A DNA stretch of 63,585 nucleotides, the filler included, from Octopus bimaculoides (taxonomy: Eukaryota): NCBI RefSeq assembly GCF_001194135.2. It is 5 parts of 5 records of this genome, joined end to end, with 100 filler letters (N's around TTAATTAATTAA, not from the genome) between each part and the next. Parts side by side here need not be neighbours in the genome. Positions count along the whole stretch, not along the records: positions 1 to 20,694 come from NC_068995.1; 4 more parts are not named here. One strand, 5' to 3'. Under the pieces are notes generated by a model that was given only the letters and a program-made list of their open reading frames with translations, made no database searches and was not told where the DNA came from. The position numbers and the translations under genes were made by a program. Of this stretch, positions 720-18,200 are shown one piece after another; within the stretch, counting starts at the first letter, position 1; each line of letters starts with the position of its first letter.

Positions 720-1290
720 ATACGGGGGCGGGGGGTACTGCAAAGAAACCGGAATTTTGCTATATTTTTTTATTAACTTACTTTTACATTTACAATTTTA
801 TCGCCTTCAAAGTATTTTTCATTTGAAGCAATGCATCGATCCGGGTGCGTTTTCTACTATTCGAAACAGTGCTGGAACTCTTGCAAAGTGACACCATTTA
901 ACGCCTCTGTCGTGTTTATCTTCACCTCTTACACATCAGCGAATTCCGTAGTACCTGCTTTTATTACCAGTGATTACCTTCGTAAAAAGCTCCGGATCAA
1001 CTTCCAACTGTTCTTTCAGTTTACGACACCCATTCAGTTGTGGCTGTTTTTGATCATCCGTGAGGAAGCGAGGTACAAATGTTGCTGCAACTCTTTTCAT
1101 TCGCAATTCCTCAAGCAAAATTTCTTGACAGCAGCTCCTGAACACACAAGTCATATCAAGTTCGTCAATTTCTCGGTGACCGTCCTCCAAGATGAGTTCA
1201 TGTATTTTCATAATGTCTCCATTCGCTCGGGAGGTCGACAGTCATCCTGACAAGGTTGGTTTTCAAGTGAAAATTGTCCATTCCTAAAGA
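720..1290 (-). mobile_element. Mariner-type transposon relic, internally deleted (non-autonomous)
   Basis: Minus-strand ORF 936-1211 reads ...MKRVAATFVPRFLTDDQK...ELFTKVITGNKSRYYG, matching the mariner WVPR/ITGDE region. It then jumps straight to the C-terminal segment. The terminus at ~720 is flanked by TA. A homologous copy lies at 7255-7522. Confidence 0.8.
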
Positions 1291-2834: not shown

Positions 2835-3899
2835 TGCGTGTGCTTTTGTGATTGAATTTTTGTATATGTTATTTTTCTCTGAATAGATACACTTATCCAT
2901 AATAAGTTCCATTAACCATTATTTTTTCACTTAGTTACTTACAAGAATCTATTTGAAATAGATATTACTCCATCGAATTACTTTATCCCAGTTTGTAGTT
3001 AATTTACTGTCATGTCATGTGTACTCAACTAAAATTATTGTATCGAAATTAGATCGTGATTAATAACTAATTTCTTTTAGAAATATATGGGCATATATTA
3101 TGTGCACTTTATTAATCAATACACTACTGGTTTACAATATCGTCTATTGATTTATTCTTAATAGCATTCACTTTTGTCTTTTGTACATATAAATTATATA
3201 GCTGATCTCTCGTACTCTCATGGGGAATTGGTTTTTGTGAAATTGTTCGTAAATATAACAAGTTAAGAGTTACTGAAATCGCCTCTATAGTAATATAATA
3301 ACATTCTTAATAAAATAATGACTTCACAAGGGAAAATTATATATCATATATAATTAAAGTACTATATCAATATTTAATATTAAGCTTTTACTTTTTTAAA
3401 TTAGTTAAGTTTACTTACATAATGCATAATAAATGAAAAGTAGTTTCCTAAAGGGGCAAGGGTGGGCATGAGAAAGGAACACAAAATATTGAATGCGTTG
3501 AGAAAAAGAGAGACAGAGGTGGGGGGGGGGAGAAAATGGAGAGAAACAAAGTGATATATGTAGAAAAACAGAGGTTATTTTAAAATGTTTATGAAGCAAT
3601 ATACAAAGTGTTAACAAGTGAAAATAGTCAGTGTGTCCTTATGCAGCTAAATATTGATTCATTAATCAGAACTGGCGACAGATTTTATGAATTTTTCTGA
3701 ATGCTCACGAATCATATGTTTATAAGAAATTCCTTCTTCTCCATCTTTGATGAAGTTTTATATTTGCCTCAGCTTATAATATCATATAACTCTTAAACAA
3801 AAATCAAGACATTTTAATCGCTGTACATTAATCAGATATGCTAAAAGTTTAAGGCCTCATCATATTATTCAGCAATTTTAAAGTATCTGGCTCAAGAAA

Positions 3900-5027
3900 A
3901 TGAAAACAATAAAAGAGGCAACAATGATTTTAATGATTTTCTTATTTCTCATGGTGGCAGGAAATGTTGCATAAAACGTGAGATCTTTATTTTATGACTG
4001 CGTTAAAACAAAGAGACCTATTAGTCACAAAGACGACATTATAAACATAAATGTAACCCTTACCGTCTCAGATATTATTGAATTCAATATCCTGAAAAGT
4101 GTTATTGTAAGCACACTTACCCTTAAATTAAAGTCGCATGATATCTATCTTACCTGGAATAAAACAGCAACTAATGTAAAATATCGACATACTAATTTAA
4201 AGAACATATGGTATCCAGATGTTCATATACGTAACAGTGCAGAAGATAAATTCATATTTCAAAAGAATAAACAAGTTTTTATAAAATACGATGGAACGAT
4301 TAACTTACATATAGATGGAACTTACCGCATCTACTGCAGGATTGATATAGATAAATATCCTTTTGATGAGCACATTTGTTATTTATCGATTTGTTTAGGC
4401 ACAGAGATGGAGAATCAAGAAACGATAGGTAATTTTTTAATACAATACAACTTATAAACGCATATCAAATCGATGCGATTTTGAATTTGAAAGGATGGAC
4501 AACTCTGAAGGAAACGTTATAGCAGTTGGGGTTACAATTCATCTCAAACAAGAAGTTACCAATGCTGCTATAACAAGATTGCTACCTCCAATAACGTTAA
4601 CACTGCTTATCTTATTTGTATATATACTACCAGCTGAATCAGGTGAGAAACTTTCAGTTGTAATCACAATTTTTTTCGTCAATATTGTATATCTCTCTTA
4701 AACAGCAAATATTCTTGATCATAATTCTAAGGAGGCTTATATATACTTAATGTATCTCTTGATGCTAACACTTGCCAGTGGATTTTCTTCTCTCAAATCC
4801 ATAATTGTGAGTACAATTTATGTCCATCAAAATGCAACCGGAAGTACCTCATCACCAGAAATTAGAGCACAATCAACCATATCGAAAGATCACATGAAAG
4901 CAATACCGAATTAAAAAATTCTAATACCTGTCTGAAGTCTACCTTTAATTATCGAAAGCTTGATCTGATGTCTTTGTCAGTAACAGTTATATTTTTGGTT
5001 GTCTATAACATGTTTTATCCTCGTTGA
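3900..5027 (+). pseudogene. Pseudogene of an intronless atypical nAChR-like / chemotactile receptor paralogue
   Basis: Signal-peptide-like MKTIKEATMILMIFLFLMVAGNVA, then TAA at 3972-3974. Retains WYPDV, Cys-loop CRIDIDKYPFDEHIC, M1-M2 LPAESGEKLSVVITIFF and M4 YRKLDLM. Lesions: +1 frameshift ~4433-4440, TAA 4699-4701 in M2, and a further frameshift ~4860-4875. Colinear with 14102-15235. Confidence 0.92.
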
Positions 5028-5133: not shown

Positions 5134-5189
5134 TATATATATATATATATATATGTATGTATTCATGTATGTATAATTATAAGCAAGGG

Positions 5190-5745
5190 TAAAAGAAAAA
5201 AGATTTATATGCCAATATGCTGAAAATAGACTTTAAATCGTCAATCACCACATACAATATACATTCACTATGAATACAGGACGTACTGAAATCGAGGGAG
5301 GCAAGCTAACAGAATCTTTTTTAAAAATCGATGTCTCTATATTGAATCAATATCGGGATTAATCCAACGGATTTTTCCATCTTCTAAGTTGTGGTTCGTG
5401 ACCGATCACACGTGCGTTGAGGTTTGCTAAAGGATTTTATATTTACATATACCTGGGGTACTTATGTGTACACGTGACTCTTGCCTCTGCTTTTTTTCCA
5501 TCGGTGCTTGTAATTATTTCATTTATTTCTGATCGTAATCTCTACGGAAGAGGGAAAAATCCGTTGGATTAATCCCGAAATTGATTCAATATAGAGATAA
5601 CGAATTTAAAAAAACATTATTTTCGCTTGCGTTCCTTGATTTCATCACGACGTGTATTCATAGTGAATGTATATTGTATATGGTGATTAACGATTTAAAG
5701 TCTATTCTCAGCATATTGGCATAGAAATATTTTTTCTTTTGTCGT
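5190..5745. repeat. Long inverted repeat (arms ~5190-5385 and ~5545-5745), PLE pseudo-LTR-like
   Basis: TATGCCAATATGCTGAAAATAGACTTTAAATCG... reappears as its reverse complement ending ...CTCAGCATATTGGCATA. The arms contain the hammerhead motif. Confidence 0.85.
5538..5598 (+). ncRNA. Type I hammerhead ribozyme with one core substitution (U4>G)
   Basis: Stem I ATCTCTA/TAGAGAT (7 bp perfect); core CGGAAGA; stem II GGGA..AATCC-GTT-GGATT..TCCC; GAAA; stem III ATTG-ATT-CAAT; H17=A at 5591. A sister copy at 6403-6442 (minus) has the canonical CTGAAGA. Confidence 0.8.
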
Positions 5746-5843
5746 CGTTTATAATTGTTTCTAATTTGAACCTATAAAGGTATTTTAATATGTTGTTCAC
5801 TTTGATCGAATGTTTCGGAAAAAAATTTGATCCTATATTAGAA

Positions 5844-5925: not shown

Positions 5926-6975
5926 AGAAAAGACAAAAATAAAAATGAAAATGCACATCAAGTATAAAAATTAAAAACATTTTATGTACAAGGAAGAATT
6001 TAAATACAAACGATTAGTTGAATTAGGTTGGATAATGAGTCATTATTGATGATTTTTAAGAATTAAAAAGATAAAAATACCGGTTTCGCGACAAAGCGCT
6101 GCTCATATTTCTTTGACGAAGGTCGATATCAAAACGGTGTGAAAATGGTGTCAGGTCTAATAATCTCTGTTAGAGAGTTTTAGATGCAAGGGAGGTAAGC
6201 AGTTATAGAAGTGATATAATTGAGATAGAGAAATGAGATTATACTGGAGGGTAAGGGTGTTGGGATTATTGAGGTAGTAAGTAGAGTCCTGTGTCCGGTT
6301 GTGTGTCCATATTGAGTTTTGAATGATATTTATTGATGAAGAACGCTTCTTTATTTAGTCTTTGTTGCACCGAGGTGTTCTGTGAAAATTGGTAAAAAGG
6401 AGTTAATCCAACTGATTTTTCCCTCTTCAGTAGAGATTACGATAAGAAATAAATGAAATACTTACAAGCACCCATGGAAAAAAGCACAAGCGGGAGTCAT
6501 GTGCACATACAACTTCCTGATCTTCTATTTTTACCAATGTTCACAGAACACCTAGGTGCAGCAAAGACTAAATAAAGAGGCAGTCTTCATCAATAAATAT
6601 CATCCACAACTCAACATGAACACACAACCGAACACAGGACACTACTTACTTCCTCAATACTCCCAACACCTTTACTCTCCAGTATTATCTCATTTCTCTA
6701 CTCCAATTATATCACTTCCATAACTGCTTACCTCCCTTGCATCTAATTCTCTCTACTAGAGATTATTAGACCTGACACCGTTTTGATATCGACCAAAGAA
6801 AGATGAACAGCGTTTTGACATGAAACCGGTATTTTTATTTTGTAATTCTTTAAAAACAACAATAATGACTCATTATCCAACTTAATTGAACTAATTGTAT
6901 GTATTTAAATTTTTCCTTGTACATAAAACGTTTTAATTTTTATACTTGATGTGCATTTTCATTTTTTTCTTTTCT
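5926..6975. repeat. Long inverted repeat (arms ~5926-6400 and ~6528-6975) of a PLE-like 3' end
   Basis: The arms are clear reverse complements over ~450 bp. The right arm encodes QRLNKEAVFINKYHPQLN (GIY-YIG C-terminus-like) and has a GAAACCGGTA hammerhead remnant. The spacer is an inverted copy of 5462-5572. Confidence 0.8.
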
Positions 6976-7254: not shown

Positions 7255-7522
7255 TTTTTACGGAGCTTTTTACGAAGGTAATCACTGGTGATAAAAGTAG
7301 GTGCTACGAAATTTGCAGATGTGGAAGAGGTGAAGATAAAAACTACGGAGGCGTTAAAAGGTGTCACATCGCAGCAGTGTTTCGAAGAGTAGAAAACGCG
7401 CCCAAACCGATGCATTGCTTCACATCGAAAATACTTTGAAGGTGATAAAATAGTAAGCTTAAAAGTAAGTGAATAAAATAATATTGCAAAATTCCGGTTT
7501 CTTTTTGGTAACCCCACGTATA
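7255..7522 (+). mobile_element. Second copy of the internally deleted mariner family
   Basis: Reverse complement of ~720-990, with the same deletion junction after ELFTKVITGDKS. Ends ...AAAATTCCGGTTTCTTTTTGGTAACCCCACG-TA. Confidence 0.8.
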
Positions 7523-9126: not shown

Positions 9127-10375
9127 ATAGATCAACTTATATAAATAATATAATTTATGTCTACATTTCATTTTACGTTCATCGAGAGAAACATTCAAAA
9201 TATTATTATTATAAAATAATATCTCCTTAAATTCATTAGTACACGACTTACAAAAATTATTTCCTATACGATAGGATTTCGCCTTACAAACTATCTTCCA
9301 ATGTAAAATGTACGTAATATTTTTAGATTTAAATTCCAAATTATATTTACTAAGTCCAGCAGAATTAATCAAATTTCTATTCTTAAAGGAATGCCTGTGT
9401 TGAGCAACCCGTAATTTAATTTCCGTAGAAGTCGATCCTACGTAAAACTTATTTAAATTATAACATTAAGTTTATTCCCGTCCATTAAAGTCACTAAACT
9501 TATATACACATCCTTCAAATTAAATCTATTATGAAATTTACATTTAGTCTTATCTCTACATGTATTATTATGTATTTCCTGGGTCTCCTCATTATTATTA
9601 TTAGAATAAATATTTAATTTATATTTGTAATACTTATTTAACTTAAATCTATTAAAAGAAGAGATAATGTTACCAACATTATTAATAGTAGAATAACCTA
9701 CACCCAAATTATTAGAAAATATATAATATTTTTTATTATCTCTAAGGAATATATCAATTAGGTTTAAAATTTCTTTAATAATGTTAGTTTTAATTTGACT
9801 GCCGTATGGAATGATTAGCCAAAGTTTGATCTTATAGATATTTATTATTTATTTATTATTTATTATTTATATTATTACATTTAATAATATCATTAAAAGA
9901 ATTAAAATTATATTATTAAATTTATTGTTATCATTAAAAGAATTAAATTTAAATCTATTATTGTGTTCATTAAAATTATGTTTATGTTTATGTAATTTAT
10001 TATAATACCTATTATACTTACCATAATTACCTAAATAGAGCTTATCATAATTATAAAGGTTATGTTTATTAAATGAATCATTAATATTATGATCATTATT
10101 ATTAAAATTATAATTATACTTCAGATTATTAAAAAATTGAATATCATTAGAATATCCCGCCTCACGAAGGGCTTTACTGTAATAAGGTGCATGTTTTTCG
10201 AAGATCTTTAAATTGTAGGAAAGTAATGATATGCTCTTACCTATGGTAAATGTTAACGATTTCTTAAATGAGGGTGTGATTTCTTTTCGAATGAATACAT
10301 TTAATATTTTCTTTAATCTTATGGTAAGGTTGGGTATTACCTCTTGATAAGTTAAAATTAGCATCTAAATAATTT
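9125..10375 (-). mobile_element. Penelope-like element, 3' part (RT thumb, linker, GIY-YIG endonuclease)
   Basis: APYYSKALREAGY; Asn-rich linker; KLWLIIPYGSQIKTNIIKEILNLID; VYISLV...KFYVGSTSTEIKLRVAQHRHSF; LSKY..W.I..KAKSY....CKSC..E....KCRH. Confidence 0.85.
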
Positions 10376-10440: not shown

Positions 10441-10645
10441 ATTTATTATTTATTATTTATATTATTACATTTAATAATATCATTAAAAGAATTAAAATTA
10501 TATTATTAAATTTATTGTTATCATTAAAAGAATTAAATTTAAATCTATTATTGTGTTCATTAAAATTATGTTTATGTTTATGTAATTTATTATAATACCT
10601 ATTATACTTACCATAATTAACTAAATAGACCTTATCATAATTATA
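10441..10645. repeat. ~205 bp direct duplicate of 9851-10055 (Asn-rich PLE linker)
   Basis: Near-identical sequence starting ATTTATTATTTATTATTTATATTATTACAT in both places. Confidence 0.9.
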
Positions 10646-12806: not shown

Positions 12807-14101
12807 CTTTCATTTATTTTATACATATATTAGCGCTTTCATTCGTCTTTCAAACTTGTCAAATATAATTCTGTGAACATACAGAGATCTTNNNNNNNNN
12901 NNNNNNNNNNNNNNNNNNNNNNNNNNNNNNNNNNNNNNNNNNNNNNNNNNNNNNNNNNNNNNNNNNNNNNNNNNNNNNNNNNNNNNNNNNNCGTTGATCG
13001 GATCAACTGGAACCCTCGATGTCGTAAGCGACGGAGTGCTAGCAAGATAAATTACAAAACAATGAAAGGAAGAATGTGAAAATTGCATGGAAAGCCATTT
13101 TACGTTAAATCCATAAAATGGTCTCTTAGGAAATGACCAAATTCTGTTGATCTGTATCTATTTAATGAAATATTGTTAATACTGGTAAGTAAAATTCGAA
13201 AATGTATTTCATCGAACATGCTACCGTCTGTGTCATACAACAGAGAATTGAAAGGAAGAACAAAAACAGCTACAAAACTAAAACTTAAATGAAGCAAATG
13301 TAATGGTATTGTTTTTAATTGCTATTATTTACAAGCTCTTAGATGTCACTTTGTATATGGAGAAAATTGATCCATAAGCAATTGATTTCTGTAACAGTAA
13401 CAACTTTGAAGTTAATGGATAATGGACATGGTATGTTTTTATATATATTTAACTATGAATATTCTGAATCTGTGAATGGGCTCCTTCGATTGTAGTCTCA
13501 AGGGAACTTGTTTCGAATATCACTTTCCATGTCCAAATCATTAATGAACAGATTATAATATGTAAAGTTTCTTTCAAGCAACGTCCTAGGCCAGAACTAA
13601 TTGCGTACTAAATGCTTGAGTGTTTAAAATCAAACGAATGAAAGAGACTTCAATAAACACGGTAACATGAAGAGAGAGGGTGCAGTAAAAAGCTACAATA
13701 ATCAAACACCGTTGAAGAAAAATCAAGCGGGAGAGAGAGAGAGAGTGAGAGAGAGAGAGTGAGAGAGAGAGAGAGTGAGAGAGAGAGAGGGGGAGAAAGC
13801 GATTGTATGATTCAAGGGAGTCGAGCTCGAAAGAGGGAAGTGAGATTAGTTAACGTTATTTAACTGCAATGGTACGTGAAAATAACCAGTTCATTTATTA
13901 ACTTGGTTGCAGTTAAAACTTGGTGGTTTTCAAAAATATTACGACTGGCTCTTCAACGTAGAGAGCTCATCCATTTTAGCAAGGAAAACCATTTTGTGTC
14001 ATAATTAATATTTCGATTTAATTTAGAAATCAGAAATTACTCTGAACATTTTAAAATAAGAAATCAACTAGAGAACAGCGATTTACCTTCAGTTAACAAC
14101 A

Positions 14102-15235
14102 ATGAAATTAATGACTTCGGTATTATTAGCGGTTAGTGTGAACGCTGTTTCGGACAAAAACACTTTGCACACAATGTTATTCGAAAATTACACGAAAACG
14201 CTGTTGCCTTTTCCTGATGATGAAGCCATAGTGAAAATAAATGTATCTCTTATTCTTGTGAAAATCATTGAATTAGACTTTCACAAAGGTTTACTTGCAA
14301 GCAAAATTGTGCTTGGTTTATCGTGGAAGGATAACAACTTGCTGTGGAATAACAAATTGAATAATATAAGTTATATAAACGTAAATACAGAGGATATATG
14401 GTACCCACATGTTTACATATGTAACGATATGTCAGGTAATTTCGCTGTTCATAAAGGAGGAGCCACTATAGAATATGATGGAACAGTTACCTTTCATATG
14501 GACGGTATTTTCCAAACTTACTGCACAATTGATATGCACAAATATCCTTTCGATGAGCACGAATGTTATATAAAATCTTGTTTACGCCATCAAAAGTATA
14601 AAGAACAAACTATACAAAACTTTTCCTTTTACAATATGTATAACTCGTCGTCAGATACCTGGGATTATAAGTTTGTTGTAGGAGACGTCATGGAAAATGG
14701 AATTATATCGGCTAAGGTTACTATTTATGCAAATAGAAAATCGATGAGTGAAACATTCTCCCATTTTATATTCCCAGCATTGCTGACAATACTGAACTTG
14801 GGTGTGTATATATTGCCTGCTGAGTCGGGAGAAAAGGTTTCAGTTGCAATCACTATTTTCCTTGCCAATGTCGTTTATCTAACAGAATCGGCCAAGTCGT
14901 TGGGTTCTAAATCTCGTGGAGTCTCAAGATATCTATTATATCTCCTAATTCTGACACTTATCAGCGGCTTTTCTACCTTTGTCTCCATAATCGTGTGTAA
15001 ATTTTATGTCAACGAGACCAATGTGCACAAAGCTTCAGTCCCAGAAAAAGCATGTGGATCGAAAAATAAAATCGGAATTATGGACAAGTCTGTTCAAGAC
15101 AATGTAAACGTAGAAGATACAAGTCGCTCGAAGAAGCGTTTATATACATATCGGAAGCTTGACATGATATTTCTGTTCGTGACTCTTATATTTTTGTTAA
15201 GCTACATAGTTTTCGCTGTAGTATATACGGAATAA
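14102..15235 (+). CDS. Intronless divergent pentameric ligand-gated (Cys-loop) cation channel subunit, atypical nAChR-like / cephalopod chemotactile receptor family, 377 aa
   Basis: Signal peptide; WxD (SWKD); IWYP; Cys-loop C141-x13-C155 with YPFD; four hydrophobic helices; LPAESGEKVS (cation-selective -1' Glu); no vicinal CC in loop C; short (~50 aa) M3-M4 loop; M4 preceded by YRKLD; single uninterrupted ORF. Confidence 0.95.
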   Translation: MKLMTSVLLAVSVNAVSDKNTLHTMLFENYTKTLLPFPDDEAIVKINVSLILVKIIELDFHKGLLASKIVLGLSWKDNNLLWNNKLNNISYINVNTEDIWYPHVYICNDMSGNFAVHKGGATIEYDGTVTFHMDGIFQTYCTIDMHKYPFDEHECYIKSCLRHQKYKEQTIQNFSFYNMYNSSSDTWDYKFVVGDVMENGIISAKVTIYANRKSMSETFSHFIFPALLTILNLGVYILPAESGEKVSVAITIFLANVVYLTESAKSLGSKSRGVSRYLLYLLILTLISGFSTFVSIIVCKFYVNETNVHKASVPEKACGSKNKIGIMDKSVQDNVNVEDTSRSKKRLYTYRKLDMIFLFVTLIFLLSYIVFAVVYTE

Positions 15236-18200
15236 CTATAAACATAGACAGCTCATAGGGAAGGAAAAAAAGGAAAGAGCAGACGATCAGGAGAGATGAA
15301 CATCCGTTGATCCCTACAATTGTTTTTCTGTCACCGTGTTTTATTTTCCCACTTAATCCTTTCTGTCGAATAATGTAGTGTCGAAACATCCTAGACTTTT
15401 CCATTCTTCCGGAGCGTTAAACTAATACATCTTACTTTTGTTCCTTTAGCTGCCTTCGTCTTTTGTTTTCGGTAAATATAAACTATATATATATGTTCTC
15501 AACCACAAATACTTAACTTACAAAAGACGAGTATCTGCTGGTAGACAGCGAGGTGTGTATATCTTAGGAGTATGTGGTTGACAATGTGCATTATACTACC
15601 ACTGCTTCTCTTACGTATTTGAATATAATTATAGATATGTTCTACTTGAAACAATTCTGTCAACAATAAATTCTAACCAAGCAACAGTCAACATTAAGAA
15701 AGACTTAATCTGAACTGAAGAGATATCTTATTTGCTTAATATTCTCCAAAGCATTTCTTCATTACCAGAAAATTAAATCTATGTTCACAGGAGAGGATAT
15801 CAACATCAACAACATAGAAACTATGGAAAGCATAACATAGGATGATGAACTTTTTACTAGATTGTGTTCTTGACATCTGCGGTGTATCAACGTACGTGTT
15901 TAACAACCTTACTGTTTCTACCTATATATATGCATACGTTACATTCTTTATCACACCTCAGAACACGCACATACAGGACGCATACATCTACATGAACACC
16001 CACACAACTATATGCACAATATAACACATCCATAGAATCCATACCCACTTTTAGCCATATATATATAAAACGACATGGACCCTCACAGTGTACAATATCT
16101 TGCCTACACTCATACGCACAGTTTGATTATACGTACAGTGATATCTAGGTCTTGCTTGTTGCGTCCATAACATACGCATAAATGCCTTTATCCGATCAAA
16201 CATTCCCAAGGCCAGCACACGCATTTTCAGACATGCATTCAAAAAACGCGTTCTACTCACAGATATGCGTATATGAAGCGACAAAGAAACAGCTTCAATA
16301 TAACATCAACAAAGAAACAGCCTCACGATAACAAAGAAAAACACTTTTGCAGCAAATGAATAAACTTAGATCCTCTCCCCACTATACTCCCTCCCACACA
16401 AAACATAAATACATCAGCACACTTCTTCGAAATAAAAACAACATGCGTGCTAGCAAACAAATGCAGGTACATTTCCACACGTTTGTTCACATATATATAC
16501 ACTTCGAAATATACATACATTGGAGGTTCGCACGCTATACACTGACCTTCAAAGAACCATATATGTATGCAAGCATACAGCTGCCTCCAGTGTTACAAAC
16601 GGATCTCGCATCAATACATCCATGCATACATTTGTAATTACTTGCCCACCACAAACATGATATATATTATACCGGTAACCACTGACGTAGCTAAACAGAA
16701 ACGCTCACATGCACATAGTCCATCCCCTTATATTAGTTCATTTATATTTAGTTGATATATTAGATTCTAATACTAAATATATATACATACACAAGAAAAA
16801 CTACAAAATTTAATAGCACATGCACTTACATGAGAGCGCACACGATATTTACACACAGTTAGAATATTTGTTAGCGTGTGAATACACAATGATAGAAACC
16901 TTAATATTACACGAGCACACAACTATGTGTTCACATATACGCATCTATCAATTATAAATTATTGCACTCTGTTTATTTTGTACGCATGAAAACTCATTCC
17001 TGCTTTTTCGGATATGGTCAATCGACCGCCAAAATTGTCATCGTTATGATTCATATACTAATACACTTTTATGCCACTAGAAACTTTCTGGCGTATCGTA
17101 TACTTTATAGTCTTCTTATTGTTTTTTTTTGTGTATCTATGACCTTAAGTGCACTTTATTTTCAAATCCCATTCTTTGTTCTTATTAACCTTAAATTTTG
17201 AATCTATATGTATGCATACGTGTATGTATGAATATATATATATATATATATATATANNNNNNNNNNNNNNNNNNNNNNNNNNNNNNNNNNNNNNNNNNNN
17301 NNNNNNNNNNNNNNNNNNNNNNNNNNNNNNNNNNNNNNNNNNNNNNNNNNNNNNNNNNNNNNNNNNNNNNNNNNNNNNNNNNNNNNNNNNNNNNNNNNNN
17401 NNNNNNNNNNNNNNNNNNNNNNNNNNNNNNNNNNNNNNNNNNNNNNNNNNNNNNNNNNNNNNNNNNNNNNNNNNNNNNNNNNNNNNNNNNNNNNNNNNNN
17501 NNNNNNNNNNNNNNNNNNNNNNNNNNNNNNNNNNNNNNNNNNNNNNNNNNNNNNNNNNNNNNNNNNNNNNNNNNNNNNNNNNNNNNNNNNNNNNNNNNNN
17601 NNNNNNNNNNNNNNNNNNNNNNNNNNNNNNNNNNNNNNNNNNNNNNNNNNNNNNNNNNNNNNNNNNNNNNNNNNNNNNNNNNNNNNNNNNNNNNNNNNNN
17701 NNNNNNNNNNNNNNNNNNNNNNNNNNNNNNNNNNNNNNNNNNNNNNNNNNNNNNNNNNNNNNNNNNNNNNNNNNNNNNNNNNNNNNNNNNNNNATATATA
17801 TAGAGCAATTATTATAATTTTATTTATGCCTTATAAATGAATAATTTATTCTTTTATTAACTATAAATCAAACTTATTTCTATTTATCTTTGCTCAATCA
17901 TGCCTATTTATTTTATTTATTGTCCTAGTTCTATTTATCTACTTTACTTTATCCCCAATTATATTCTATCCAGTCTGTAAAGCGTTCACTAAAGCATATT
18001 ATGATACAAATCATAAGCAGCACTGTTTAGTCTCATGAAAGGAATTGATAGGTCCACATAAAATATCTCATCTCTTTTTCTTCTCTGATGAAATTATGCT
18101 CGTGTCACATAAATGCAAATTTAATGTACACATTTGTAATTGAATTATTGAGTGTTAATTGAAACAGATGTAAGAAACGAAAATTACCAATTCATTAATA

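What the first reader, a model, noticed from the sequence alone, without database searches (positions are those of the whole stretch)
14102..15235. Intact orphan chemotactile-type receptor with the entire acetylcholine cage erased
Seen: a single-exon 377-aa Cys-loop subunit. Aligned by eye to alpha7 nAChR, the Trp55 position is Val70, Tyr93 (loop A) is Cys107 and Trp149 (loop B) is Arg162. Loop C is short, with neither vicinal cysteines nor tyrosines. Known: octopus has tandemly clustered, sucker-expressed atypical nAChR-like genes (Albertin et al. 2015), shown to be chemotactile receptors (van Giesen et al. 2020), with structures for only a few members (Allard et al. 2023; Kang et al. 2023). 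Inference: this is a CR subunit. A basic residue at the loop B position hints at a ligand class different from the hydrophobic ligands described for the studied member, or at a non-binding heteromer partner.
Basis: partly seen in the sequence, partly recalled or inferred. Interest (0 to 1): 0.75.

Follow-up and report, generated by a model that had tools for sequence, protein, structure and literature searches.

The report
Uncharacterised octopus chemotactile receptor gene
This is an intact, already-annotated gene from the known octopus "taste-by-touch" chemotactile receptor family; its lost acetylcholine site is normal for that family, and only its unusually polar predicted binding pocket is mildly interesting.

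Summary
Window 14102-15235 (+) is an uninterrupted 377-codon Cys-loop receptor gene. V70, C107 and R162 sit at the alpha7 W55, Y93 and W149 positions, and loop C is short with no vicinal cysteines.

The reading as a chemotactile receptor (CR) is supported:
- The best solved-structure match is octopus CRT1.
- It groups with CRT1 and squid CRB1 at 98.5-99.5% bootstrap, outside the nAChRs.
- The coding sequence has no intron.
- It is the last gene seen in a same-strand array of about 420 kb on Octopus bimaculoides chromosome CM046615.1, which also holds CRT1-type genes.
- dN/dS is 0.24-0.30 across three octopod orthologs.

It is not novel. The exact protein is already in NCBI nr, the species has a published family of up to 26 CRs, and loss of the acetylcholine cage is the family's known hallmark. 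Arg at the loop-B position recurs in two paralogs, in a hypervariable column.

The modest new point is that its 17-member subclade (every named member is from Octopus) carries Asp and His where CRT1 has F124 and L153, two conserved hydrophobic pocket residues. That suggests ligands different from CRT1's. Expression and ligand could not be tested here.

The parts
14102..15235 (+). Complete single-exon coding sequence (377 aa plus stop) of a CR-family pentameric ligand-gated ion channel subunit. It corresponds to O. bimaculoides GCA_001194135.2 CM046615.1:38228599-38229732.
14102..14152 (+). Probable signal peptide (aa 1-17, MKLMTSVLLAVSVNAVS). This is inferred from hydrophobicity and from its position ahead of the N-terminal helix of the ligand-binding domain.
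   Evidence: (the alignment to mature CRT1 starts at aa 17)
14153..14743 (+). Extracellular ligand-binding domain (aa 18-214). It has five N-x-S/T sequons (N29, N47, N88, N173, N181).
14309..14311 (+). V70, at the loop D position of alpha7 W55 and CRT1 Y58. The CRT1 Y58V mutant does not respond to ligand.
   Evidence: bioRxiv 10.1101/2025.10.28.685082
14420..14422 (+). C107, at the loop A position of alpha7 Y93. It is the first half of the Cys pair shared by most of the CR clade.
14495..14503 (+). Loop E residues H132-M133-D134. H132 aligns with CRT1 W122 and D134 with CRT1 F124. Asp is present here in 15 of the 17 subclade members.
14522..14566 (+). Canonical Cys-loop, C141 to C155, with the YPFD motif.
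14579..14590 (+). Loop B residues C160-L161-R162-H163, aligning with CRT1 C150-V151-A152-L153. R162 is at the alpha7 W149 position. C160 is the second half of the clade's Cys pair. His163 is present in 16 of the 17 subclade members.
14612..14668 (+). Loop F region (aa 171-189). It is the most variable part of the ligand-binding domain among the three orthologs. Positions 177 and 179, which align with CRT1 E167 and S169, differ in all three species.
14681..14704 (+). Shortened loop C tip (aa 194-201, GDVMENGI). It has no vicinal Cys, and I201 sits at the alpha7 Y195 and CRT1 F192 position.
14747..15016 (+). M1-M3 transmembrane region (aa 216-305). M2 is aa 243-267, with the -1' Glu of the GEK motif (E244) and the 9' Leu (L254). 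This is the most constrained part of the gene (dN/dS 0.03-0.12).
15017..15127 (+). Short, poorly conserved M3-M4 cytoplasmic loop (aa 306-342). Model confidence is low here (pLDDT below 50 for aa 309-342).
15128..15232 (+). Pre-M4 helix and M4 (aa 343-377).
3925..5015 (+). Decayed CR paralog (pseudogene) on the same strand, about 9 kb upstream and about 40% identical to the ORF. A stop follows 16 codons (TAA 3973-3975). There are frameshifts near 4435 and near 4860-4872, and in-frame stops at 4438-4440 and 4699-4701. The conserved W75 and C107 equivalents are lost.
13045..17250 (.). Block collinear with the O. sinensis ortholog locus (L001 8943-13185, 84% identity). It covers the gene plus about 1 kb upstream and about 2 kb downstream.
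12892..12991 (.). Assembly gap of 100 N, about 1.1 kb upstream of the start codon. Synteny with O. sinensis stops here.

Best explanation
The ORF encodes a functional subunit of the cephalopod chemotactile receptor (CR) family. These are nAChR-derived pentameric ligand-gated cation channels that octopus suckers use for contact chemosensation.

Shown here: the gene is intact and has no intron in its coding sequence. It is under purifying selection. It is the last gene seen in a head-to-tail CR array on O. bimaculoides chromosome CM046615.1, and it falls in the clade that contains the solved receptors CRT1 and CRB1.

Inferred mechanism: five subunits, either identical or mixed with other CRs, form a channel. 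A ligand other than acetylcholine binds at the subunit interface, in the pocket that corresponds to the acetylcholine site. That pocket is lined by V70 (loop D), H132 and D134 (loop E), the C107-C160 pair with L161, R162 and H163 (loops A and B), loop F residues 177-179, and I201 (short loop C). Binding opens a cation pore that keeps the -1' Glu of the GEK motif and the 9' Leu gate.

The four residues that form CRT1's conserved hydrophobic inner pocket (Y58, F124, A152, L153) are V, D, R and H here. I therefore expect ligands different from CRT1's terpenoids, beta-carbolines and steroids, and probably more polar ones. CRT1's vestibular E104 is Ala115 here, so I also expect lower Ca2+ permeability than CRT1.
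For: Family and fold:
- Pfam finds the ligand-binding and membrane domains.
- PDB sequence search gives CRT1 at E 3e-45 (158 bits), against about 1e-24 (about 90 bits) for nAChR subunits.
- The AF2 model (pLDDT 75.7) fits CRT1 8eis_A best locally, with target TM-score 0.89 and rmsd 2.5 A at 30% identity.

Phylogeny:
- NJ trees from two alignments place the ORF with CRT1 (99.5% bootstrap) and with CRT1 plus CRB1 (98.5%). Alpha7 and all other nAChR-like representatives fall outside.

Shared signature:
- The Cys pair C107/C160 occurs in 29 of 32 clade members. Across 137 sequences, 29 have both, 1 has one and 107 have neither.

Genomic context:
- CRT1-type genes lie at 37.81, 37.93 and 38.05 Mb and ORF-type genes at 38.15, 38.17 and 38.23 Mb, all on the + strand. 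The three CRT1-type genes, P0008 and the ORF are single-exon.

Selection:
- dN/dS is 0.24-0.30 overall and 0.03-0.12 in M1-M3 across three octopod orthologs.
- All inner-pocket residues, including R162, are invariant in the three orthologs.

Pore: GEK motif and 9' Leu are present.

Pocket comparison: using the CRT1 mutagenesis and selection data in bioRxiv 10.1101/2025.03.03.641191 and 10.1101/2025.10.28.685082.
Against: - No expression data were available, so a role in suckers is assumed from family membership.
- No function was tested.
- I mapped the pocket lining by homology to CRT1, not from coordinates.
- The ORF is only about 32% identical to CRT1.
- Its 17-member subclade may be sister to the CRT1 plus CRB1 group rather than nested inside it (nested in 51 of 200 bootstraps).
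- The polar pocket departs from the flat hydrophobic pocket described as a common property of CRs.
- I could not confirm from the papers held that this locus is one of the published 26 CRs.
Confidence: 0.8

Rival explanations
1. It is a CR subunit that binds no ligand itself. It works only as a partner in mixed pentamers, tuning the permeation or pharmacology of ligand-binding CRs such as CRT1 or CR840.
For: CR subunits are reported to combine into varied multimeric complexes (bioRxiv 10.1101/2025.03.03.641191; PMC11526382). Residues that CRT1 needs in order to respond (Y58, F124) are V and D here, and the CRT1 mutants Y58V and F124V do not respond.
Against: The inner-pocket residues (V70, H132, D134, L161, R162, H163, I201) are invariant in three orthologs, and Asp134 and His163 are conserved across the subclade. 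That argues for a constrained, used pocket rather than a relaxed one. Loop F varies between orthologs in the way reported for ligand-contacting outer-pocket residues of CRT1.
Confidence: 0.25
2. It is a true nicotinic acetylcholine receptor subunit, as the automated names of its relatives suggest (for example 'acetylcholine receptor subunit alpha-like 2' for the O. sinensis ortholog). It would be a structural non-alpha subunit.
For: It matches the nAChR Pfam domains and PDB nAChR chains at about 1e-24, and it keeps the cation-type GEK pore motif.
Against: Aromatic residues are missing from both faces of the site: W55 on the complementary face, and Y93, W149 and the loop C tyrosines on the principal face. 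It could therefore contribute to neither half of an acetylcholine site. It groups with CRT1 and CRB1 at 98.5-99.5% bootstrap. It lies inside the intronless CR array.
Confidence: 0.02
3. It is a recently inactivated or unexpressed gene copy, an intact-looking relic in an array that also contains pseudogenes.
For: The array holds decayed copies: window 3925-5015, and fragments in L004 (19632-19940, 21446-22265) that overlap the same fragments in L003. No expression evidence was available.
Against: The frame is open in three octopod species. dN/dS is 0.24-0.30 overall and falls to 0.03-0.12 in the pore-forming helices. All invariant pLGIC residues are retained.
Confidence: 0.03
4. It is a CR-clade channel used outside chemotactile sensing, for example in the salivary gland, nervous system or another epithelium, with an internal or soluble ligand.
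For: The polar His/Asp/Arg pocket is unlike CRT1's hydrophobic pocket. A group of posterior-salivary-gland pLGIC sequences sister to the CRs has been reported (bioRxiv 10.1101/2025.06.15.659772).
Against: The gene lies in the same tandem array as CRT1-type genes. No tissue data point elsewhere.
Confidence: 0.1

Closest known systems
Octopus bimaculoides CRT1 (formerly CR518; PDB 8EIS, 9E6B)
   Same: Same pLGIC fold, with target TM-score 0.89 and rmsd 2.5 A against the model. Same clade. Same intronless structure, chromosome, strand and array. Same loss of the acetylcholine cage, same short loop C without vicinal Cys, same Cys pair at the loop A and loop B positions, and the same GEK and 9' Leu pore.
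   Different: Only about 32% identical. CRT1 ligand contacts Y58, W122, F124, A152, L153, S169 and F192 are V70, H132, D134, R162, H163, M179 and I201. Vestibular E104 is A115. CRT1's ligands are known (terpenoids, beta-carbolines, lumichrome, progesterone); none is known for this gene.
Squid CRB1 (PDB 8EIZ)
   Same: Member of the same 35-sequence clade at 98.5% bootstrap. It is also a non-cholinergic pLGIC.
   Different: Distant in sequence: E 5.6e-24 to the ORF, no closer than true nAChRs. CRB1 has Tyr/Tyr where the ORF has the Cys pair. It belongs to a separate sub-branch of 6 sequences.
ORF-type paralogs in Octopus (for example P0008, P0014, P0005 and P0011 in O. bimaculoides; P0006, P0007, P0010, P0013 and P0027 in O. 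sinensis)
   Same: They form a 17-member subclade at 100% bootstrap. They share Asp at position 134, His at 163, His/Tyr/Phe at 132 (16 of 17) and mostly Ile at 201. P0008 and P0014 lie in the same array. P0006 and P0014 also have Arg at the loop-B position.
   Different: They are 40-67% identical to the ORF. The loop-B position and loop F vary among them.
Human alpha7 nAChR and other canonical nAChR subunits
   Same: Common ancestry, overall architecture, Cys-loop, and cation-selective M2 with GEK and 9' Leu.
   Different: The aromatic cage (W55, Y93, W149, Y188, Y195) and the C190-C191 pair are all absent. Loop C is about 8 residues shorter and the M3-M4 loop is much shorter. The ORF falls outside the nAChRs in the trees.

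Membership tests
Cephalopod chemotactile receptors (CRs) | Pentameric ligand-gated channel subunit architecture: ligand-binding domain with Cys-loop plus four transmembrane helices | tested here: met
   Pfam PF02931 and PF02932. C141-C155 loop. The AF2 model has a beta-sandwich followed by helices 216-237, 243-267, 276-311 and 339-376. Foldseek gives probability 1.0 to CRT1 and to nAChR chains.
Cephalopod chemotactile receptors (CRs) | Falls in the clade of characterised CRs (CRT1, CRB1), apart from nAChRs | tested here: met
   NJ bootstrap 99.5% with CRT1 and 98.5% with CRT1 plus CRB1 on a second alignment. The order inside the clade is unresolved. No maximum-likelihood tree could be run.
Cephalopod chemotactile receptors (CRs) | Lacks the residues needed to bind acetylcholine | tested here: met
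   V70, C107 and R162 replace W55, Y93 and W149. Loop C is shortened, with no Cys-Cys pair and no Tyr.
Cephalopod chemotactile receptors (CRs) | Intronless coding sequence (stated as characteristic of CRs in PMC13174522, citing van Giesen et al. 2020) | tested here: met
   The continuous 1134-nt ORF equals the annotated 377-aa NCBI protein. The neighbouring CR genes P0008, P0031, P0192 and P0201 are also single-exon.
Cephalopod chemotactile receptors (CRs) | Located in a tandem array with other CR genes | tested here: met
   Six genes and at least two pseudogene remnants lie on the + strand of CM046615.1 between 37.81 and 38.23 Mb.
Cephalopod chemotactile receptors (CRs) | Cys pair at the alpha7 Y93 and G147 positions. 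I derived this signature here; it is not a published criterion. | tested here: met
   C107 and C160 are present. The pair occurs in 29 of 32 clade members, and the both/one/neither split is 29/1/107. The CRT1 C150A mutant does not respond. A disulfide is inferred, not measured.
Cephalopod chemotactile receptors (CRs) | Expressed in sucker or hectocotylus sensory epithelium | not testable with these tools
   No RNA-seq data were available. The Logan contig L005 is collinear with genomic flanks and looks like genomic DNA, so it is not evidence of transcription.
Cephalopod chemotactile receptors (CRs) | Forms a cation channel gated by contact chemicals and not by acetylcholine | not testable with these tools
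   Only the pore motifs can be read: -1' Glu in GEK, 9' Leu, and no anion-type Pro-Ala-Arg motif.
CRT1-type CRs with a hydrophobic pocket | Conserved hydrophobic inner pocket (CRT1 Y58, F124, A152 and L153, reported under purifying selection) | tested here: not met
   The aligned residues are V70, D134, R162 and H163. Asp134 and His163 are conserved across the ORF's subclade (CRT1 data). The gene is therefore a CR by descent but not a CRT1-type pocket.
Canonical nicotinic acetylcholine receptor subunits | Aromatic box on the principal and/or complementary face, with vicinal Cys for alpha subunits | tested here: not met
   None of W55, Y93, W149, Y188, C190-C191 or Y195 is retained.

The most novel reading that the evidence does not exclude
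The ORF belongs to a CR lineage of 17 representative sequences in which every named member is from Octopus. Its orthosteric pocket carries conserved polar residues: Asp at the CRT1 F124 position, His at the L153 position, and here Arg at the A152 (alpha7 W149) position. This lineage could be a functionally separate CR class tuned to polar or charged cues, or to protons or metal ions, rather than to the poorly soluble hydrophobic ligands that currently define CR pharmacology.
Probability: 0.2. Interest if true: 0.6.

Novelty: already known. Interest (0 to 1): 0.25.

Why it matters
As it stands this is routine: one more annotated member of a described sensory receptor family. It has two uses. 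First, public names for these genes are misleading. Relatives are labelled alpha-like 2, delta-like, unc-29, beta-3 and even 5-HT3A-like, so anyone mining octopus genomes for cholinergic genes will count CRs by mistake. Second, CR pharmacology rests on a few CRT1-type receptors with hydrophobic pockets. If the Asp/His-pocket subclade detects a different chemical class, octopus arms could taste a wider range of chemicals than is now known. This gene is intact, constrained and single-exon, so it would be a convenient representative to clone.

Tried and rejected
- **Primary papers:** van Giesen 2020 (PMC7605239), Allard 2023 (PMC10228259), Kang 2023 (PMC10262778), the Current Biology primer (PMC11055638) and Albertin 2015 (PMC4795812) are not held. 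I relied on papers that cite them.
- **Lists of CR genes:** no supplements are held for MolluscaGenes or the mating preprint. Text searches for CR gene names found only CR840 and CRT1. I therefore could not match this locus to one of the published 26.
- **Counting CRs by profile search:** the word index scored only 8000 candidates and missed CRT1, so it cannot serve as a census.
- **Logan contig L005 as expression evidence:** it aligns collinearly with the genome, intergenic flanks included, so it is probably genomic.
- **Pfam on six other window ORFs:** no hits. They look like chance ORFs in repeats.
- **Disulfide and salt-bridge geometry (C107-C160, R162-D134):** the structure tool returns no coordinates, so neither could be measured.
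- **Rejected readings:** canonical nAChR subunit and pseudogene (see rivals).

Full report

Yes. Window 14102..15235 (+) is an uninterrupted ATG-to-TAA frame of 377 codons. Pfam finds the neurotransmitter-gated channel ligand-binding domain (E 4.8e-30) and the membrane domain (E 2.9e-7).

To use the classical numbering safely, I checked my recalled mature human alpha7 sequence against the PDB. It is identical to 9j37_A over residues 1-328. I also rebuilt CRT1 residues 5-362 from the HMMER alignment.

- V70 aligns with alpha7 W55.
- C107 aligns with Y93.
- R162 aligns with W149.
- Loop C is about 8 residues shorter, with no Cys-Cys pair and no Tyr. I201 sits at the Y195 position.

The Cys-loop is intact (C141 to C155, YPFD motif). 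M2 keeps the GEK motif (-1' Glu) and the 9' Leu. An AlphaFold2 model (pLDDT 75.7) shows the expected beta-sandwich and four helices.

**2. What is it?**

*Sequence and fold.* Against all PDB sequences the best matches are octopus CRT1 (9e6b and 8eis, E about 1e-45, 156-158 bits). True nAChR subunits and squid CRB1 reach only about 1e-24. By Foldseek, CRT1 8eis_A gives the tightest fit, with target TM-score 0.89 and rmsd 2.5 A.

*Identity of the gene.* The exact 377-aa protein is already in NCBI nr (P0024, identical). It is encoded at Octopus bimaculoides GCA_001194135.2, chromosome CM046615.1, 38228599-38229732. The window matches that record with no mismatch over 16.6 kb. O. sinensis has an ortholog, XP_036365783.1, at 88% identity, which is named 'acetylcholine receptor subunit alpha-like 2'. 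A third octopod has one at 83%.

*Phylogeny.* An exhaustive HMMER search of 1.84 billion representatives found 26 proteins at E up to 1e-30 and then a long tail of nAChR-like proteins.
- From 137 sequences (the ORF, CRT1, alpha7 and the retrieved proteins of 290-530 aa) I built an NJ tree with 200 bootstraps. The ORF falls in a 32-member clade with CRT1 at 99.5% support. Alpha7 and every other nAChR-like sequence lie outside.
- P0057 in that clade is a close relative of squid CRB1 (E 3e-77).
- With CRB1 added and a different alignment method, the ORF, CRT1 and CRB1 share a 35-member clade at 98.5%.
- Inside the clade, the ORF sits in a 17-member subclade with 100% support. Every named member of that subclade is from Octopus.
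- Whether the subclade is nested within the CRT1 plus CRB1 group or is its sister is unresolved. It was nested in 51 of 200 replicates.

*A shared signature.* C107 is not simply a lost Tyr. Together with C160, at the alpha7 G147 position, it forms a Cys pair found in 29 of the 32 clade members, including CRT1. Across the 137 sequences, 29 have both, 1 has one and 107 have neither. CRB1 and its nearest relatives have Tyr or His instead. The CRT1 mutant C150A, which removes the equivalent of C160, does not respond to ligand (bioRxiv 10.1101/2025.10.28.685082). A disulfide between loops A and B is my inference. I could not measure it.

*Genomic context.* All these genes are on the + strand of CM046615.1:
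- CRT1-type paralogs at 37.808 Mb (P0192), 37.933 Mb (P0201) and 38.048 Mb (P0031).
- ORF-type genes at 38.153 Mb (P0014) and 38.171 Mb (P0008).
- CR fragments near 38.163-38.166 Mb.
- A decayed copy at window 3925-5015 (38.2185 Mb).
- This gene at 38.2286 Mb.

The three CRT1-type genes, P0008 and this gene are single-exon. P0014's annotated model spans 2.5 kb and looks truncated or spliced. Nothing CR-like lies in the next 10 kb. At least ten CRT1-type O. bimaculoides proteins map to this chromosome, and the O. sinensis copies of both types share one chromosome. Intronless structure and tandem arrangement are reported family traits (PMC13174522).

*Selection.* Against O. sinensis, dN/dS is 0.30 overall, 0.29 in the ligand-binding domain and 0.12 in M1-M3. 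With the third species the values are 0.24-0.27 overall and 0.03-0.04 in M1-M3. The gene is being maintained.

**3. How it probably works**

By homology it is a subunit of a pentameric cation channel gated at the subunit-interface pocket by something other than acetylcholine.

I mapped the CRT1 residues tested by structure and mutagenesis onto the ORF:

| CRT1 residue | ORF residue |
|---|---|
| Y58 | V70 |
| W122 | H132 |
| F124 | D134 |
| C150 | C160 |
| V151 | L161 |
| A152 | R162 |
| L153 | H163 |
| E167 | Y177 |
| S169 | M179 |
| F192 | I201 |
| E104 (vestibule, tunes Ca2+ permeation) | A115 |

The preprint reports Y58, F124, A152 and L153 as a conserved, purifying-selected hydrophobic inner pocket. 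It finds that Y58V and F124V abolish responses and that polar substitutions at L153 weaken them.

The ORF differs at all four positions, and this is a property of its lineage. Asp134 occurs in 15 of 17 subclade members. His163 occurs in 16 of 17. Position 132 is His, Tyr or Phe in 16 of 17.

In the three orthologs, all of V70, C107, H132, D134, C160, L161, R162, H163 and I201 are invariant. Loop F positions 177 and 179 differ in all three species. This repeats the pattern described for CRT1: a fixed inner pocket with a variable outer pocket.

I therefore favour a ligand-binding subunit whose ligands differ from CRT1's and are probably more polar, with lower Ca2+ permeability than CRT1. These last steps are inference.

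**4.

Arg is conserved in the three orthologs. It also occurs in P0006 and P0014, which belong to a different branch of the subclade. Across the CR clade the column reads A, G, R, E, D, N, P, I, S or T. Arg alone is weak evidence. The Asp134/His163 pattern is the stronger signal. An accessory role, binding no ligand and working only in mixed pentamers, remains possible. The conserved pocket makes it less likely.

**5. Comparison with what is known, and novelty**

Several sources already state the following (PMC11526382, PMC10338036, PMC13174522, the two Bellono-lab preprints):
- CRs are nAChR-derived.
- They do not respond to acetylcholine.
- They lack the signature ligand-binding motifs.
- They are intronless.
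- They number up to 26 in O. bimaculoides.
- Their pocket residues evolve quickly.

Cage loss is ordinary in this part of the superfamily. Only 4 of the 137 sequences in the comparison keep a canonical cage: alpha7 itself and three representatives.

The gene is annotated and lies in the CR array of the very genome where the family was counted. I rate it as already known, with one caveat. I could not see the published list of 26, so I could not confirm that this locus is on it.

The only mildly new point is the conserved polar pocket of the ORF-type subclade.

**6. Verdict**

- **Observation:** confirmed.
- **Interpretation:** partly supported. It is a CR-family gene, but the erased cage and the Cys at the Tyr93 position are family traits, and the Arg is not distinctive.
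- **Interest:** 0.25.
- **Most novel reading not excluded:** a polar-pocket class of CRs, probability about 0.2.

Noticed in passing
window 3925-5015 (+): A decayed CR paralog about 9 kb upstream on the same strand. It has an early stop after 16 codons, at least two frameshifts and two further in-frame stops, and it has lost the conserved W75 and C107 equivalents. It is still about 40% identical to the ORF.
   Followed up: yes
window 12892-12991; L001 1474-2709: Synteny with O. sinensis (84% over 4.3 kb) stops exactly at a 100-N assembly gap 1.1 kb upstream of the gene. O. sinensis has a 63%-identical CR paralog (P0027) 7.3 kb upstream. Its O. bimaculoides counterpart (P0005/P0026) is recorded only on a separate 9,954-bp contig. 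The chromosome assembly may be missing a CR gene here.
   Followed up: partly
ORF aa 171-189 (window 14612-14668): Loop F is a substitution hot spot between orthologs: 7 of the 44 O. bimaculoides versus O. sinensis differences fall in 19 residues, with dN 0.16 and dS 0 in that pair. Positions 177 and 179, which align with ligand-side residues E167 and S169 of CRT1, differ in all three species.
   Followed up: partly
proteins P0002, P0006-P0014, P0031, P0188-P0201: Automated public names for CR-clade genes are inconsistent and misleading. They include alpha-like 2, delta-like, gamma-like, unc-29, acr-2-like, beta-3 and 5-hydroxytryptamine receptor 3A-like. Only CRT1 itself carries a chemotactile receptor name, in UniRef.
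   Followed up: no
P0001 (340 aa), P0025 (268 aa), P0014 (296 aa, L004 10001-12552), P0027 (456 aa, L001 1-2717): Several gene models in this family look wrong. Older models of this gene lack M4 (P0001) or the first 109 residues (P0025). P0014 diverges after M2 and its model spans 2.5 kb. O. sinensis P0027 has an unrelated extension of about 76 aa at its N terminus.
   Followed up: no
L004 19632-19940 and 21446-22265 (the same fragments recur in the overlapping L003 at 1729-2037 and 3543-4362): More CR fragments with frameshifts lie between P0014 and P0008, so the array contains several dead copies.
   Followed up: no
window 731-994 and 7261-7515; 5175-5756; 6135-6791; 9851-10055 and 10441-10645: Dispersed and hairpin repeats. 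There is an inverted pair of copies about 260 nt long and 85-87% alike. Two long hairpins have arms of 210 and 264 nt. A 205-nt direct repeat is 99% identical with copies 590 nt apart. (TA)n, (CA)n and (GT)n microsatellites are abundant. ORFs in these regions have no Pfam match.
   Followed up: partly
the 137-sequence comparison set: Apart from alpha7 itself, only three of the sequences compared keep an aromatic cage (aromatic at W55 and Y93, Trp at W149). Most of the nearest non-CR relatives are therefore also divergent nAChR-like subunits that probably do not bind acetylcholine.
   Followed up: no
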